Part shown: one piece after another, positions 59,967-63,497 of the stretch
Position numbering within the stretch: the first letter of the stretch is position 1
Layout: each line of letters opens with the position of its first letter
Origin: Macrostomum hystrix
Taxonomy: Eukaryota; Animalia; Platyhelminthes
Direction: 5' to 3'
Assembly (NCBI GenBank): GCA_950097015.1
Contig: CATNEN010000039.1
Span: 19,096,001 to 19,160,000 of the forward strand
DNA length: 64,000 nt
Program-made: the position numbers and the translations under genes
Notes under the pieces: generated by a model
What the model saw: the letters and a program-made list of their open reading frames with translations, nothing else
Database searches by the model: none
What the model was told of the DNA's origin: nothing

Positions 59967-62900
59967 TTAACTTCCATTATTTTTTGCATCTATCAGGCAG
60001 AGCATCAGATTGCGCGCCAATTGGGTCAAATTCGCTACGGTGGATGTTGGACTCTCGACGCTCGTGTCGTCCCAATAAACTACGCGAAAGCAACCATTGC
60101 TACTTAGACAAAACTTCTCCAACTCGTCACTGAATTCACGCAGCTGGTATGCCAGACTTCTTGCCCGAACGCCGCCGATGCAACATTCTGTCTGCTTGCG
60201 AATCGACAGCAGTGATGTGGGAATTTCAAACATCAGTTCGTGACACTCCCACTGGTGCTTACGGAATGTGTACCGTCTGCCATTTCGGTTGAACTCGACG
60301 ACACTCCAACTAACGCCGATGCTTTCCAGACCAGTGTACATATTTGAGTAGTCAGGATAGTGACCGCTTGACGGGATGACGAAGCAGTAGGGAAGACTTC
60401 TTTGAACTTCCGGATCACTGGATCTGGACTTCATGTCTAAGATAAGTGAAAAGAAAGTGGACAAGTGAGGCTGTTGATGAAGCATCAAATGGGCATCACT
60501 CATACGGGGTGCTATCACAAGCTCGAAATTTCACAACGTCGAAATCTTTAGCAAGGGACTGCATAAGCTCGAATTTTCACAACGTCGAAATTCACAACGT
60601 CGAAATCTTTAGCAAGGGACTGCATAAGCTCGAATTTTCACAACGTCGAAATTCACAACGTCGAAATCTTTAGCAAGGGACTGCATAAGCTCGAATTTTC
60701 ACAACGTCGAAATTTCACAACGTCGAAATCTTTAGCAAGGGACTGCATAAGCTCGAAATTTCACAACGTCGAAATCTTTAGCAAGGGACTGCATAAGCTC
60801 GAATTTTCACAACGTCGAAACTTCACAACGTCGAAAACTAACTAAAATACTCGTAGCAGCTACCTTCACTAGGTCGAAACTTCATAAGCTCGAAATGTCA
60901 CAAGCTCTTGCTAAAGCTTTTTAGTTTTCGACGTTGTGAAGTTTCGACCGTACGAAAATTCGAGCTATGCAGTCCCATGCTTGAGTTTTCGACCTTATGA
61001 AGTTTCGACATAATGAAGTTTCGACTTTATGAAATTAGCTGCTTTTCGAGTTTTCGATGTTATGAAATTTCGACATTTTGAAATTTCGAGTTTTCGAAAC
61101 CCCCCACTCATACTACGACTAATATTAGTATAATCCATCAAGCACTTACAATCCAGCAAGTGTTGGGCAAAGCCATGCCAAATATTTGCCACCATGGCGT
61201 ACGCCGCAGACATTAGGAGCAGACTTTCCTCTACACGAACAGCTTTCTCATCGAGACCTGAAAGTTAAAAAAAAAGGAAAAAACTGTTATTTCTCACCTC
61301 TGAACTTTACGGATAATCCAGTAAAAATTGAGCTGAATAATATTACCTAGAGCGCAGACTAACTCTGAAAAGCTCGCTCGGTGTGGAAGGCCACATGGAA
61401 AAGCGAACTGCAGCCGAGACAAATCACTGAGACTTGACACCACCGCTGTACAGAAGTCAGGAAGGTCTCGAAGATCGGAAGGAAGAAGCTCAAAGACCTC
61501 TCCATGTTTGTTCACATCGGCCACAAGGATAACGGAAATATTGTGGTGGCGACAGTGGTGTAACTAAAAATTCAAACGCAATGAAAAAAGTTCTCAGCCA
61601 AATCTTTCACGGCATAGAATTGATTAATCTAACTGAATCCAATCGAATAAATCGAACGTTTTCGCTTACATTCCTCACAGCGGAGACGATAGCAGAACGA
61701 ATTTTATCGCTGATCGATCTTAAATCGTCCTGATGCAGGATAAACAGAACTCTTTCTAGCTCGTTCAAGCTCGCTCGATCTCGTCCAGTGCCAACTCTGA
61801 TGTCTAAACTCTCGAGCAAGTTCTCAACAGAGTGTTTCTCATCAGAAGTGAAGGACTCACTAAATATTACTGACACCTGCTGAGATTCCTCTTCAACCAA
61901 AACGAAACCGTCTGTCTCAGGGTCTTTTTTATGATCTTTAAGAACTGTGCCACAATTATCCCAGTCTCTGAGAAGCTGGTAGTTGAAGATTTCTTCAAGG
62001 ATTCGGCTCTGAAGCTGCTGGTTCGAGTCTGTGTCCGTGTGTTCAATGAGGCTAAGACTGGACCACTCCATACCAGTTGGCGCCTCCTTCGTGCCATCAA
62101 AGTCACAGAGCAGCTGGCCGAAACTGCGGTGCTTCACGATCATCTTCAGCTCATCTGTGAATTCGTCAAAAATACTTTCTCGTTCTTCCATACCTAGGTC
62201 TAACTGACGAATGACAAAAGTGGGCGCCGCGTAGCCGCAAATGATGTAGGCATGGCTGTAGCCATCCGGCAACGGCTTATCTAATCGGACGAGGTAGGCG
62301 GGCATTTGTTTTGCGTAGCCGGAACTGCCAAACACCAGGCAAAGGTCTGACTTTCCATCGGTAATCTTGTTACATTCTGGAAAAAGCTGGCTGGGATATG
62401 CCTCAAATTCCGCCCGGCCGCGCAAAATTGACTTGTTCAACAACAGAAAGTACTTTGGGATGACCAGAATTCGGCTGGGGTCAATTTTAAAACTGCTGCA
62501 TTTCAATTGGTCGTCTATTTGTTCTCCGATTACTCTAGCCAACCTCGGCAGGATGCTACTGAGGAATCCCGTTACCAACTGCCAGGCAAAGCTTTCTCCA
62601 CGACTGCTGAAGCTACTTGGCTTCGGTTCTGCAGTTGATTGAATTCAATTCAAACTTGTACGCTATTGTTAACGTAAAAATAACCATAATTAATTCAAAA
62701 CTTTAATAATCTGAATTCCTACCTTCAGTCAGGGCATTGAGAAAGTTTTCTACACTCTGACTTTCCAGATCTACGAAGTGAAGCATTCGTAACGCTCGTT
62801 TACCAGCGTGTAAAAGATTGATGCTCCTGCCTCTGAAGTTCTTAACGACATAGGCTCTACGATTTTTCTGCCTATCGCACTGAAAATAGCAATAAATTTA

Positions 62901-63497
62901 ATATTAATATTTAATATGGTCTCGAGTGTGCTCCCGAATAAGTAAGAGCGTAAATAGCCGTTGGCTTTTTAAATCCTTTACAGACTACTAAAATGACAGA
63001 AAGGAACAGTAGTAAAAGAAAATGAAGTCACATAGATCAGCTCACCCAGTGCATGACACGCCTGTAGAGATGACACAAGTACTTTAACTTTGGAGGCTCG
63101 TTAAAAATGACAACTAAACGAATGTTGGAATAGCTGTCTTTTGGCAACAGCAGCTCATCCCAGTCACCTGGACTTTCTGGCCATGTTTTAGTTGTCGTTG
63201 CGAAACTACTTATGCGCATTAGATCTTCAAGCTTGGACTCGATCGCACAGCCGCTTTGTTGGGATCCGTACCCGACTAGGACAATCTCTGGACTCGCTGA
63301 ATCGAAGGCAAAGGATTGTTGATTCAGAATATATGATAACTTTGATTGGCTAAAGAGTGCTTCAGAAACGTCATACAGGTACAGAAGCGCACACGTTCAT
63401 AATGACAAACTTTACCTGACGCATCTAGAGCTGGTATACTGGGCTGGACAAGCATCGCAACCTCCCCTGTCAAACTGCCATTTGACAATGCAGCCAT
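59967..63497 (-). CDS. STING1: Divergent soluble TIR-STING-TIR-STING protein, ~747 aa; exons 63497-63416, 63296-63046, 62879-62723, 62628-61670, 61563-61347, 61257-61150, 60436-59967
   Basis: Six GT-AG introns with compatible phases (1,0,1,0,1,1) give a 2244-nt open frame, with an in-frame stop just upstream of the ATG. STING-like domain 1: GESFAWQLVTGFLSSILPRL...YIICGYAAP...ERESIFDEFTDELKMIV...LQSRILEEI. Domain 2: AYAMVANIWHGFAQHLL...YCFVIPSSGHYPD...NRNGRRYTF...FEIPTSL...QLREFSDELEKF...CFRVVYWDD. Each is preceded by an alpha/beta TIR-like unit. The symbol is a family-level call only. Confidence 0.75.
60506..61104. mobile_element. Mutator-like foldback MITE in the last intron of the TIR-STING gene
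   Basis: 9-bp TSD CACTCATAC (60497-60505, 61105-61113); GGGG...CCCC termini; arms built of inverted TTTCACAACGTCGAAA repeats. Confidence 0.85.

What the first reader, a model, noticed from the sequence alone, without database searches (positions are those of the whole stretch)
59967..63497. Hidden 7-exon TIR-STING-TIR-STING gene: a soluble tandem STING receptor
Seen: seven minus-strand exons splice in phase into ~747 aa with no transmembrane stretch. Two regions follow the motif order of the STING cyclic-dinucleotide-binding domain (human GLAWSYYIGYLRLILP / LYILLP / AG..RVY lid / CVLEYATPL / RLEQAKLFCRTLEDIL / CRLIAY): 62600-61970 and 61213-59990. Each is preceded by a TIR-like unit (EIVLVGY..RLVVIF..LRMLHFVDL..ENFLNAL; VSVIFS..RVLFIL..ISVILV..LPSDLRDL). 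Known: canonical animal STING is a 4-TM ER protein, while TIR-STING fusions occur in bacterial CBASS and a few lophotrochozoans such as oyster. Inference: this is a highly diverged member of that soluble class. If the host is a flatworm, it would extend STING signalling to a lineage where it is poorly documented.
Basis: partly seen in the sequence, partly recalled or inferred. Interest (0 to 1): 0.92.

Follow-up and report, generated by a model that had tools for sequence, protein, structure and literature searches.

The report
Soluble tandem-STING gene in a flatworm
This is a real, expressed seven-exon flatworm gene for a membrane-free protein with two STING immune-sensor domains, which matters because flatworms were reported to have lost STING; the "TIR" label on its two other domains is not demonstrated.

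Summary
Seven minus-strand exons (63497-59967) join in phase through six GT-AG introns into a 747-codon frame. All six junctions appear in intron-less contigs of four public runs, and one 2394-nt contig with no mismatches spans the whole gene. No segment looks transmembrane.

STING domain 1 (exon 4) is supported by sequence. The genome holds at least 12 paralogous loci. A profile of them hits only STING chains in the PDB (E 2.5e-4), and 8 of 12 paralogs match Pfam STING_LBD.

The two "TIR-like" units are alpha/beta domains of flavodoxin type. TIR profiles find 48 true TIR loci in this genome but none in these genes, so TIR remains only a lead.

The only public relatives are Macrostomum lignano proteins, so the host is a macrostomid flatworm. 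No cGLR, SMODS or OAS synthase was found.

The same domain arrangement is already annotated in oyster, so this is a very divergent new variant, not a new kind. The joined protein was never built. All searches were run exon by exon.

The parts
63416..63564 (-). Exon 1: 5' UTR (transcript contig reaches 63564) plus the start codon at 63497 and 27 codons and 1 base
   Evidence: The ORF start was read. Junction 63416|63296 appears in four runs and the contig end lies at 63564.
63046..63296 (-). Exon 2: first half of the N-terminal alpha/beta ('TIR-like 1') unit
   Evidence: Junctions confirmed. It aligns with the N-terminus of the M. lignano orthologue P0004/P0005 (tblastn E 5e-5). It has no paralogue in its own genome and no Pfam match.
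62723..62879 (-). Exon 3: second half of the N-terminal alpha/beta unit
   Evidence: Junctions confirmed. It aligns with P0004 and P0002 in alignment A6.
61670..62628 (-). Exon 4 (319 whole codons): STING-like domain 1 (about 62626-61980), a linker, and the first half of the second alpha/beta unit (about 61921-61670)
   Evidence: At least 12 paralogous loci in the genome. The paralogue profile A1 hits only STING chains in the PDB, best 8efn at E 2.5e-4. Pfam STING_LBD matches 8 of 12 paralogues, and one paralogue reaches 25.6 bits over profile positions 3-145. The exon alone gets no Pfam match.
61347..61563 (-). Exon 5: second half of the second alpha/beta ('TIR-like 2') unit
   Evidence: Junctions confirmed. 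44% identical to residues 450-520 of P0005. The intron position after the 'AAEKV/SAVRN' helix is conserved in the paralogues.
61150..61257 (-). Exon 6: the predicted first helix (alpha1) of STING-like domain 2
   Evidence: Junctions confirmed. Conserved small exon in 8 paralogous loci. It aligns with P0005 residues 523-557. The alpha1 assignment is an inference from its position and the conserved G-F pair.
59884..60436 (-). Exon 7: the rest of STING-like domain 2 (155 codons, stop at 59969-59967) plus a 3' UTR running to about 59884
60515..60836 (.). Tandem repeat inside intron 6 (61-bp unit x4.2, 97% matches; further 16-bp arrays at 60987-61099). It is not part of the coding sequence.
   Evidence: The intron is removed in the transcript contigs.

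Best explanation
The locus is an expressed gene of a macrostomid flatworm. It encodes a 747-aa cytosolic protein with the domain order alpha/beta unit - STING domain - alpha/beta unit - STING domain, and it lacks the four transmembrane helices of canonical animal STING.

It is the one-to-one counterpart of a 712-aa Macrostomum lignano protein. It belongs to a lineage-restricted, tandemly duplicated family with at least 12 loci in this genome, all of which keep the STING ... STING order.

Shown here: the gene model, its expression, the absence of a transmembrane segment, homology of domain 1 to STING, a STING fold for domain 2, and the family expansion.

Inferred: the protein is a sensor of cyclic (di)nucleotides in innate immunity. 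STING works as a dimer with one ligand pocket at the dimer interface. The two unlike STING domains of one chain therefore most likely pair with each other and form one asymmetric pocket.
- Domain 1 keeps the alpha1 motif (G..FAW....GFL..ILP, with Phe at the position of human Y167). In this gene it has Gly and Ala where human STING has E260 and T263.
- Domain 2 keeps an invariant R-x-Y in the lid hairpin and a Glu before the I-P-T turn, which are the positions of human R238, Y240 and E260.

Ligand binding would then drive oligomerisation and switch on the flanking alpha/beta units, as TIR domains do in bacterial and oyster TIR-STING.

No cGLR, SMODS or OAS-type synthase was found in the genome, so the ligand may be of microbial origin.
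For: Gene model and expression.

Domain 1 is STING:
- Profile of 12 paralogues against the PDB: 76 hits, and every listed one is a STING chain, best E 2.5e-4. The 'YA(S/T)P' segment is also aligned in register.
- Repeated with the full-length family profile: 77 hits, again only STING among those listed.
- Pfam STING_LBD matches 8 of 12 paralogues, best E 1.1e-5. One paralogue reaches 25.6 bits over 143 of 182 profile positions.

Domain 2 has the STING fold:
- Model pLDDT 83.9 with strand/helix order b-a-b-b-b-a-a-b-a.
- Foldseek top E 4e-5, TM 0.51-0.58, only STING listed.

Family and conservation:
- The E4-E6-E7 order is conserved in the paralogous loci.
- M. lignano orthologues have the same architecture.
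- Invariant R53, Y55, near-invariant E70 and invariant P72 in domain 2. Invariant G10, A14, W15, F21, L22 and P27 in domain 1.

Context:
- No canonical STING elsewhere in the genome.
- The only Mab-21 family hit is the MAB21L1 orthologue. No SMODS or OAS hit.
- Oyster has TM-less STINGs with two STING and two TIR-superfamily domains (PMC11103948).
Against: - Exon 4 and exon 7 taken alone match no Pfam family, and no paralogue reaches the STING_LBD gathering score.
- The sequence link of domain 1 to STING rests mainly on a helix of about 30-40 residues.
- Domain 1 was not confirmed by structure. The single-sequence model was useless (pLDDT 38).
- Domain 2 has no sequence-level link to STING or to domain 1, so its assignment rests on one predicted model built from 15 rows.
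- The residue correspondences to the human contact residues were read from alignments and strand positions, not from a superposition.
- Pairing of the two STING domains has no support. The only test gave no answer.
- The TIR identity of the flanking units is unproven.
- Recent paralogues evolve with dN/dS 0.65-1.16. That fits immune genes but also relaxed constraint.
- Ligand binding is untested.
Confidence: 0.72

Rival explanations
1. It is a true TIR-STING-TIR-STING protein, homologous in architecture to the oyster class. Its TIR domains have diverged beyond profile detection and act as NADases or as adaptor scaffolds after ligand-driven oligomerisation.
For: - Each STING domain is preceded by an alpha/beta unit of about 130-150 residues with alternating strand and helix segments.
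- In the language-model feature search with residues 1-132 of the orthologue, the nearest named clusters are TIR_2 and ThsB_TIR families, with scores 0.88-0.92.
- The Atlas models of both units resemble flavodoxin-like folds, the fold class of TIR.
- hhalign against this genome's own TIR domains aligns 80 columns in the expected strand order.
- The same order of two TIR and two STING domains is annotated in oyster, another spiralian (PMC11103948).
Against: - No TIR, TIR_2 or SEFIR match at E<=10 in any exon, paralogue or orthologue. PADLOC gives none either.
- The same Pfam TIR_2 search finds 48 genuine TIR matches in this genome, and none lies at a STING-family locus.
- The hhalign probability is 1.1%.
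- The second unit gets no usable feature hit.
- Atlas scores under 0.9 with fewer than 170 shared features are leads only by the tool's own calibration.
- No conserved catalytic glutamate could be placed.
Confidence: 0.4
2. The STING folds are retained, but the protein no longer senses cyclic dinucleotides. It would be a scaffold, a decoy, or a sensor of another small molecule. The flanking units would be lineage-specific flavodoxin-like domains unrelated to TIR.
For: - In this gene and its M. lignano orthologue, domain 1 has Gly and Ala at the positions of human E260 and T263.
- No recognisable cyclic-dinucleotide synthase is present in the genome.
- dN/dS is high among young paralogues.
- The family is very far from all known STINGs.
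Against: - The lid R-x-Y and the Glu of domain 2 are invariant or nearly so in all 15 sequences.
- The aromatic residue at the Y167 position is kept in domain 1.
- Older paralogue pairs show dN/dS of 0.15-0.27.
- STINGs without a host synthase have been proposed to read microbial cyclic nucleotides (PMC10732462).
Confidence: 0.2
3. It is a decaying or non-functional duplicate in a fast-turnover gene family, transcribed but without a role.
For: dN/dS is near 1 in some young paralogue pairs. The gene sits next to retroelement remains, and a repeat array lies in intron 6.
Against: - The 747-codon frame across seven exons is intact, with canonical splice sites.
- The gene is expressed in four samples.
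- A full-length orthologue with the same four-unit order exists in M. lignano at only 47% identity over exon 4, which implies long-term preservation.
- The window gene is closer to that orthologue (238 bits) than to any paralogue in its own genome (145 bits).
Confidence: 0.05

Closest known systems
[quoted passage not shown]
   Different: Oyster TIR and STING domains are recognised by standard profiles. Here neither the window's STING exons nor the alpha/beta units reach any Pfam threshold. Oysters also keep a canonical TM-STING and cGLRs, and neither was found in this genome. Common descent of the two tandem architectures was not tested.
Canonical animal STING (TMEM173; human, Nematostella, coral Sp-STING)
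   Different: There is no four-helix membrane domain and no C-terminal tail. Two unlike STING domains sit in one chain instead of a homodimer of one. Several human contact residues are replaced in domain 1.
Bacterial CBASS TIR-STING (Sphingobacterium faecium SfSTING, PDB 7UN8; 9LMQ)
   Same: A soluble protein in which an effector-type alpha/beta domain precedes a STING domain. It offers a plausible model of activation by ligand-driven oligomerisation.
Macrostomum lignano predicted proteins PAA63807.1 / A0A267ESF9 (712 aa), PAA82216.1 (582 aa), PAA82218.1 (927 aa)
   Same: The 712-aa protein is the direct orthologue of the window gene, with 47% identity over exon 4 and the same four units. The other two are orthologues of paralogous loci. 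Some cluster members already carry the automatic UniRef name 'Stimulator of interferon genes protein'.
   Different: They are unstudied database entries with inconsistent automatic names (also 'Death domain-', 'SEFIR domain-' and 'RWD domain-containing'). The 582-aa form lacks the second alpha/beta unit, and the 927-aa form has an extra one at its N-terminus.

Membership tests
STING ligand-binding domain (Pfam PF15009 STING_LBD) | Match to the curated profile at or above the gathering score (27 bits) | tested here: not met
   Window exons 4 and 7 get no match at E<=10. The best paralogue reaches 25.6 bits, below the 27-bit cut-off. 8 of 12 paralogues match at E<=1, best 1.1e-5.
STING ligand-binding domain (Pfam PF15009 STING_LBD) | Specific sequence homology of domain 1 to solved STING proteins | tested here: met
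   The family profile A1 against 177,635 PDB sequences gives 76 hits, and all those listed are STING, best E 2.5e-4. Profile A7 gives 77 hits, again only STING among those listed.
STING ligand-binding domain (Pfam PF15009 STING_LBD) | STING fold of domain 2 (central sheet with lid hairpin, flanking helices) | tested here: met
STING ligand-binding domain (Pfam PF15009 STING_LBD) | STING fold of domain 1 | tested here: inconclusive
   The single-sequence AF2 model of exon 4 had pLDDT 37.8.
STING ligand-binding domain (Pfam PF15009 STING_LBD) | Cyclic-dinucleotide contact residues (human Y167, R238, Y240, E260, T263) | tested here: inconclusive
   Read from alignments only. Domain 1 has F at the Y167 position, and G and A at E260 and T263. 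Domain 2 has invariant R53-x-Y55, near-invariant E70, and T73 in the window gene only. No superposition was available.
STING ligand-binding domain (Pfam PF15009 STING_LBD) | Binding of a cyclic dinucleotide | not testable with these tools
   This needs recombinant protein and a binding assay.
Canonical animal TM-STING | Four N-terminal transmembrane helices | tested here: not met
   The highest 19-residue hydropathy mean over all exons is 1.35. The N-terminal region is an alpha/beta unit.
TIR-STING fusion (bacterial CBASS / oyster) | A domain recognisable as TIR (Pfam TIR, TIR_2, ThsB_TIR; SEFIR as a relative) | tested here: not met
   No match in the exons, paralogues or orthologues or in PADLOC. 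Whole-genome scans with PF13676 and PF01582 find 48 and 18 matches, none at STING-family loci. PF08357 finds none. hhalign against this genome's own TIRs gives probability 1.1%.
TIR-STING fusion (bacterial CBASS / oyster) | Flavodoxin-like alpha/beta domain directly N-terminal of the STING domain | tested here: inconclusive
   The Atlas models of the orthologue (whole-protein pLDDT 0.40) give TM 0.5-0.68 to flavodoxin, CheY and B12-binding type folds for residues 1-132 and 365-520. The feature search points to TIR families at 0.88-0.92 for the first unit only.
TIR-STING fusion (bacterial CBASS / oyster) | NAD+ cleavage or TIR-TIR signalling on activation | not testable with these tools
   This needs an enzyme assay. 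No catalytic glutamate could be assigned from the alignments.

The most novel reading that the evidence does not exclude
Macrostomid flatworms never lost STING. Instead they turned it into a cytosolic, single-chain pseudo-dimer. In this reading two unlike STING domains of one polypeptide form one asymmetric pocket that reads a foreign (microbial) or so far unknown nucleotide signal without any host cGLR. The signal is passed on through highly diverged TIR-type domains. This would be a third way of building a STING receptor, beside the membrane homodimer and the bacterial TIR-STING filament.
Probability: 0.25. Interest if true: 0.8.

Novelty: new variant of a known kind. Interest (0 to 1): 0.62.

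Why it matters
[quoted passage not shown] This was based on Schistosoma (PMC4117786), and a 2026 study found neither in the planarian Schmidtea (PMC13563047). Most platyhelminths are also reported to have no cGLRs beyond Mab21-like proteins (PMC9980059).

Here an early-branching flatworm lineage carries an expressed, expanded STING-domain family of at least 12 loci. So the loss happened inside the phylum, not at its base. STING can also persist without a recognisable host synthase.

Two STING domains in one chain give a natural experiment on how a dimeric receptor becomes asymmetric.

Macrostomum lignano is a laboratory model with RNAi and transgenesis (my own knowledge), so the function can be tested directly.

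Two things temper the novelty. The tandem TIR/STING arrangement is already annotated in oyster. Some M. lignano entries already carry an automatic STING name.

Tried and rejected
1. Pfam on each exon alone: no relevant match.

2. PDB sequence search with exon 4 or exon 7 alone: nothing relevant.

3. Single-sequence AlphaFold of exon 4: pLDDT 38, unusable.

4. Word-indexed protein search with exon 4, with P0005, and with P0005 residues 520-712: nothing beyond the M. lignano cluster itself.

5. Sequence profile of 11 exon-7 paralogues against the PDB and Pfam, and hhalign of domain 1 against domain 2: no significant link. Domain 2 is recognisable only by structure.

6. Full-length alignments that included the short alpha/beta fragments (A3, A4): MAFFT scattered the fragments. 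These alignments were not used for folding. A clean alignment without them (A7) was built instead.

7. Complex prediction of STING domain 1 against domain 2 of the orthologue: 'no answer' (score 0.00, ESMFold2, alignment not used, partner poorly folded). This is no evidence either way.

8. TIR tests with Pfam, PADLOC, genome-wide TIR/TIR_2/SEFIR scans and hhalign against this genome's own TIRs: all negative or non-significant.

9. Considered and rejected:
- Contamination or horizontal transfer. The gene has spliceosomal introns, lies on a 21-Mb contig, and has M. lignano orthologues.
- Separate genes. One contig spans all exons.

10. The spliced exons were never joined into one protein for any search or fold. 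Everything was done exon by exon or on the M. lignano orthologue.

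Full report
**Observation**

On the minus strand of 59967-63497 there are seven exons: 63497-63416, 63296-63046, 62879-62723, 62628-61670, 61563-61347, 61257-61150 and 60436-59967. They join in phase through six GT..AG introns into 2244 nt, which is 747 codons plus a stop.

Public data confirm the model. 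Four runs of one study and one organism hold contigs in which each of the six introns is precisely removed, with CT..AC ends on the + strand. In run X2 a single 2394-nt contig covers 59884-63564 with all introns gone and no mismatch. The runs are not labelled as RNA. However, their share of sampled words (0.56-0.61) equals the exonic share of the stretch, and intron-less contigs with canonical splice ends can only come from cDNA. The exons therefore belong to one transcript.

No exon contains a hydrophobic stretch of transmembrane quality. The highest 19-residue hydropathy mean is 1.35.

Every search and fold used single exons by reference, paralogous exons, or the full-length Macrostomum lignano orthologue. 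That joined step is left out.

**Whose genome this is**

An exhaustive HMMER scan of 1.84 billion representative proteins with exon 4 found only three clusters. All three are from Macrostomum lignano.

The best one (P0001/P0005, 712 aa) is 47% identical over exon 4. It scores higher (238 bits) than any paralogue in the window's own genome (145 bits). It aligns with exons 2, 3, 5, 6 and 7 in the same order. It is the orthologue, and the host is a macrostomid flatworm.

The window's genome is 220 Mb in 42 contigs. It has at least 12 loci related to exon 4 and 12 related to exon 7, always in the order exon 4 ... exon 6 ... exon 7. They are clustered on contig 2 (8.97-9.10 Mb, at least 7 copies) and on contig 39 (4.23-4.25 Mb, 3 copies). 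Single copies lie on contigs 38 and 7 and in this window.

**First STING domain**

Exon 4 alone matches nothing in Pfam or the PDB. The family does.
- A profile of the 12 paralogous exons (A1) hits 76 PDB sequences. Every one listed is STING, and the best is coral Sp-STING3 (8efn) at E 2.5e-4.
- The strong part of the match is the first helix: family consensus GeafAWqlatgFLrlilPnLe against dGfAWnYyfGYLklvlPrLe.
- A second, weak stretch aligns the family's 'YAsP' with STING's 'EYATP' in the right order.
- Pfam STING_LBD matches 8 of the 12 paralogues, best E 1.1e-5.
- In the whole-genome scan it matches one paralogue over 143 of 182 profile positions at 25.6 bits, just under the 27-bit cut-off. 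It matches nothing else in the genome, so there is no canonical STING.

I take homology of domain 1 to STING as established. It rests on sequence only, because the single-sequence model was useless.

**Second STING domain**

By sequence, exon 7 and its ten paralogues are linked neither to STING nor to domain 1.

I folded exon 7 with a clean 15-row alignment (A5, checked). The model is confident, with pLDDT 83.9 and pTM 0.79. Its element order is strand, helix, three strands (a hairpin plus one), two helices, strand, helix. That is the order of the STING ligand-binding domain after its first helix.
- Foldseek against the PDB gave 82 hits at E<=0.001, and every hit listed is a STING ligand-binding domain (top 4e-5, TM 0.51-0.58 over about 150 columns).
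- An independent all-against-representatives search gave STING in the top 15 places.
- Bacterial STINGs score 5.3-6.7. The first unrelated chain scores 4.4.

The small exon 6 sits where the missing first helix should be. It is conserved in eight loci.

**Pocket residues**

These were read from alignments, not from a superposition.
- Domain 1 keeps an aromatic residue (Phe) at the position of human Y167. This gene and its orthologue have Gly and Ala where human STING has E260 and T263. The contig-2 paralogues have Asp and Ser there.
- Domain 2 has an invariant R-x-Y at the start of the second hairpin strand and a nearly invariant Glu before an invariant Pro. These fit human R238/Y240 and E260.

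The two domains are thus unlike each other and complementary. Two other first-stage notes on this stretch say the same.

**The 'TIR-like' units**

Both units exist and are conserved in the orthologue. Nothing significant ties them to TIR.
- Pfam gives no TIR-related match for the exons, paralogues or orthologues, and PADLOC gives no match at all.
- The Pfam TIR_2 and TIR profiles find 48 and 18 matches elsewhere in this genome, but none at a STING-family locus. SEFIR finds none.
- A profile-profile comparison with ten of this genome's own TIR domains aligned 80 columns in the expected strand order, but at probability 1.1%. The same method also failed to link the two STING domains, so this negative is weak.
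- For the N-terminal unit of the orthologue, the nearest named clusters in a language-model feature search are TIR_2/ThsB_TIR families at 0.88-0.92. That is lead level by the tool's own calibration.
- The second unit got no usable hit. Low-confidence Atlas models of both units resemble generic flavodoxin-like folds.

TIR is therefore a reasonable guess. It is strengthened by the oyster precedent, but it is not a finding.

**Mechanism**

Shown: a soluble, expressed protein with two STING-type domains.

Inferred: it senses a cyclic nucleotide.
- STING's functional unit is a dimer with one pocket at the interface (established knowledge of the family). Two unlike domains in one chain most simply pair with each other.
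- The only test I could run on this pairing gave no answer, and it counts neither way.
- The genome's single Mab-21 family hit is the MAB21L1 orthologue (2.8e-174 to human MAB21L1), not a cGLR. No SMODS or OAS match was found. These six-frame scans give lower bounds only.
- This fits the statement that most platyhelminths lack cGLRs (PMC9980059). It suggests a microbial ligand, as has been proposed for other synthase-less eukaryotic STINGs (PMC10732462).
- Young paralogues differ with dN/dS 0.65-1.16 and old ones with 0.15-0.27. That is the pattern of a fast-evolving but maintained immune family.

**Comparison with what is known**
[quoted passage not shown] The architecture is not new.
- New here are the phylum, the extreme divergence, the absence of canonical STING and of a host synthase, and the size of the family.
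- The literature I could search says flatworms lost STING (PMC4117786; PMC13563047 for Schmidtea). I found no paper on STING in Macrostomum.
- Some M. lignano entries already bear an automatic 'Stimulator of interferon genes protein' name.

**Surroundings**

Downstream on the same strand lies a 2345-aa single-exon URGCP-like large GTPase (Pfam URGCP_GTPase 7e-105). Remains of a non-LTR retroelement lie in between. I did not test whether the genes are co-regulated.

**Verdict**

It is unproven about TIR. This is a new, very divergent variant of a known kind. Interest is moderate to high because it revises the reported loss of STING in flatworms and can be tested in a laboratory flatworm.

Noticed in passing
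window 60515-61099 (intron 6): The intron holds a 61-bp tandem array (4.2 copies, 97% matches), a 46-bp variant, and degenerate 16-bp arrays at 60987-61099. By eye these look like inverted copies of part of the 61-bp unit, as in a foldback or MITE-like insertion. It accounts for most of the 713-nt intron.
   Followed up: partly
window 59800-59930: Just beyond the 3' end of the transcript, the contigs of the four runs pile up to a summed depth of 280-630, against 7-9 over the gene. Many different loose ends start at 59807-59906. This looks like a highly repeated or highly expressed element.
   Followed up: no
window 43696-50733 (-): A single 2345-aa open frame with URGCP-like GTPase domains (PF25683 at 7e-105, PF25496 at 9e-46). 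It is a 'very large inducible GTPase'-type gene on the same strand, 9 kb downstream of the STING gene. The MACPF fusion claimed by another first-stage note was not checked.
   Followed up: partly
window 56721-58865 (+): Open frames with endonuclease-reverse-transcriptase (Exo_endo_phos_2, 3.8e-18) and RNase H (2.5e-9) domains. These are remains of a non-LTR retrotransposon between the GTPase and the STING gene.
   Followed up: partly
G000 contig 2, 8.967-9.105 Mb; contig 39, 4.227-4.255 Mb (loci L002-L023): Tandem clusters of the same STING-STING family. The contig-39 copies are orthologues of M. lignano P0002 (no second alpha/beta unit) and P0003 (an extra N-terminal alpha/beta unit). Domain content therefore varies within the family. 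Young copies differ with dN/dS 0.65-1.16.
   Followed up: partly
G000 contig 38, 17.955-17.996 Mb: Five tandem copies of a gene with two TIR_2 matches each (86 and 70 bits). This is a separate expanded TIR family, unlinked to the STING loci.
   Followed up: no
G000 contig 24, 4853213-4853761 (locus L024:1369-2721:-): The only Mab-21 family match in the genome is an intron-less 451-aa frame that matches human MAB21L1 at 2.8e-174, against 3.7e-30 for a cGLR. It is the developmental Mab21 gene, not an immune cGLR.
   Followed up: yes
M. lignano cluster of P0001: Near-identical sequences of one 90% cluster carry four different automatic UniRef names: Death domain-, SEFIR domain-, STING, and uncharacterised. 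The names are therefore unreliable. The SEFIR name is at most a weak hint toward a TIR-related fold.
   Followed up: partly
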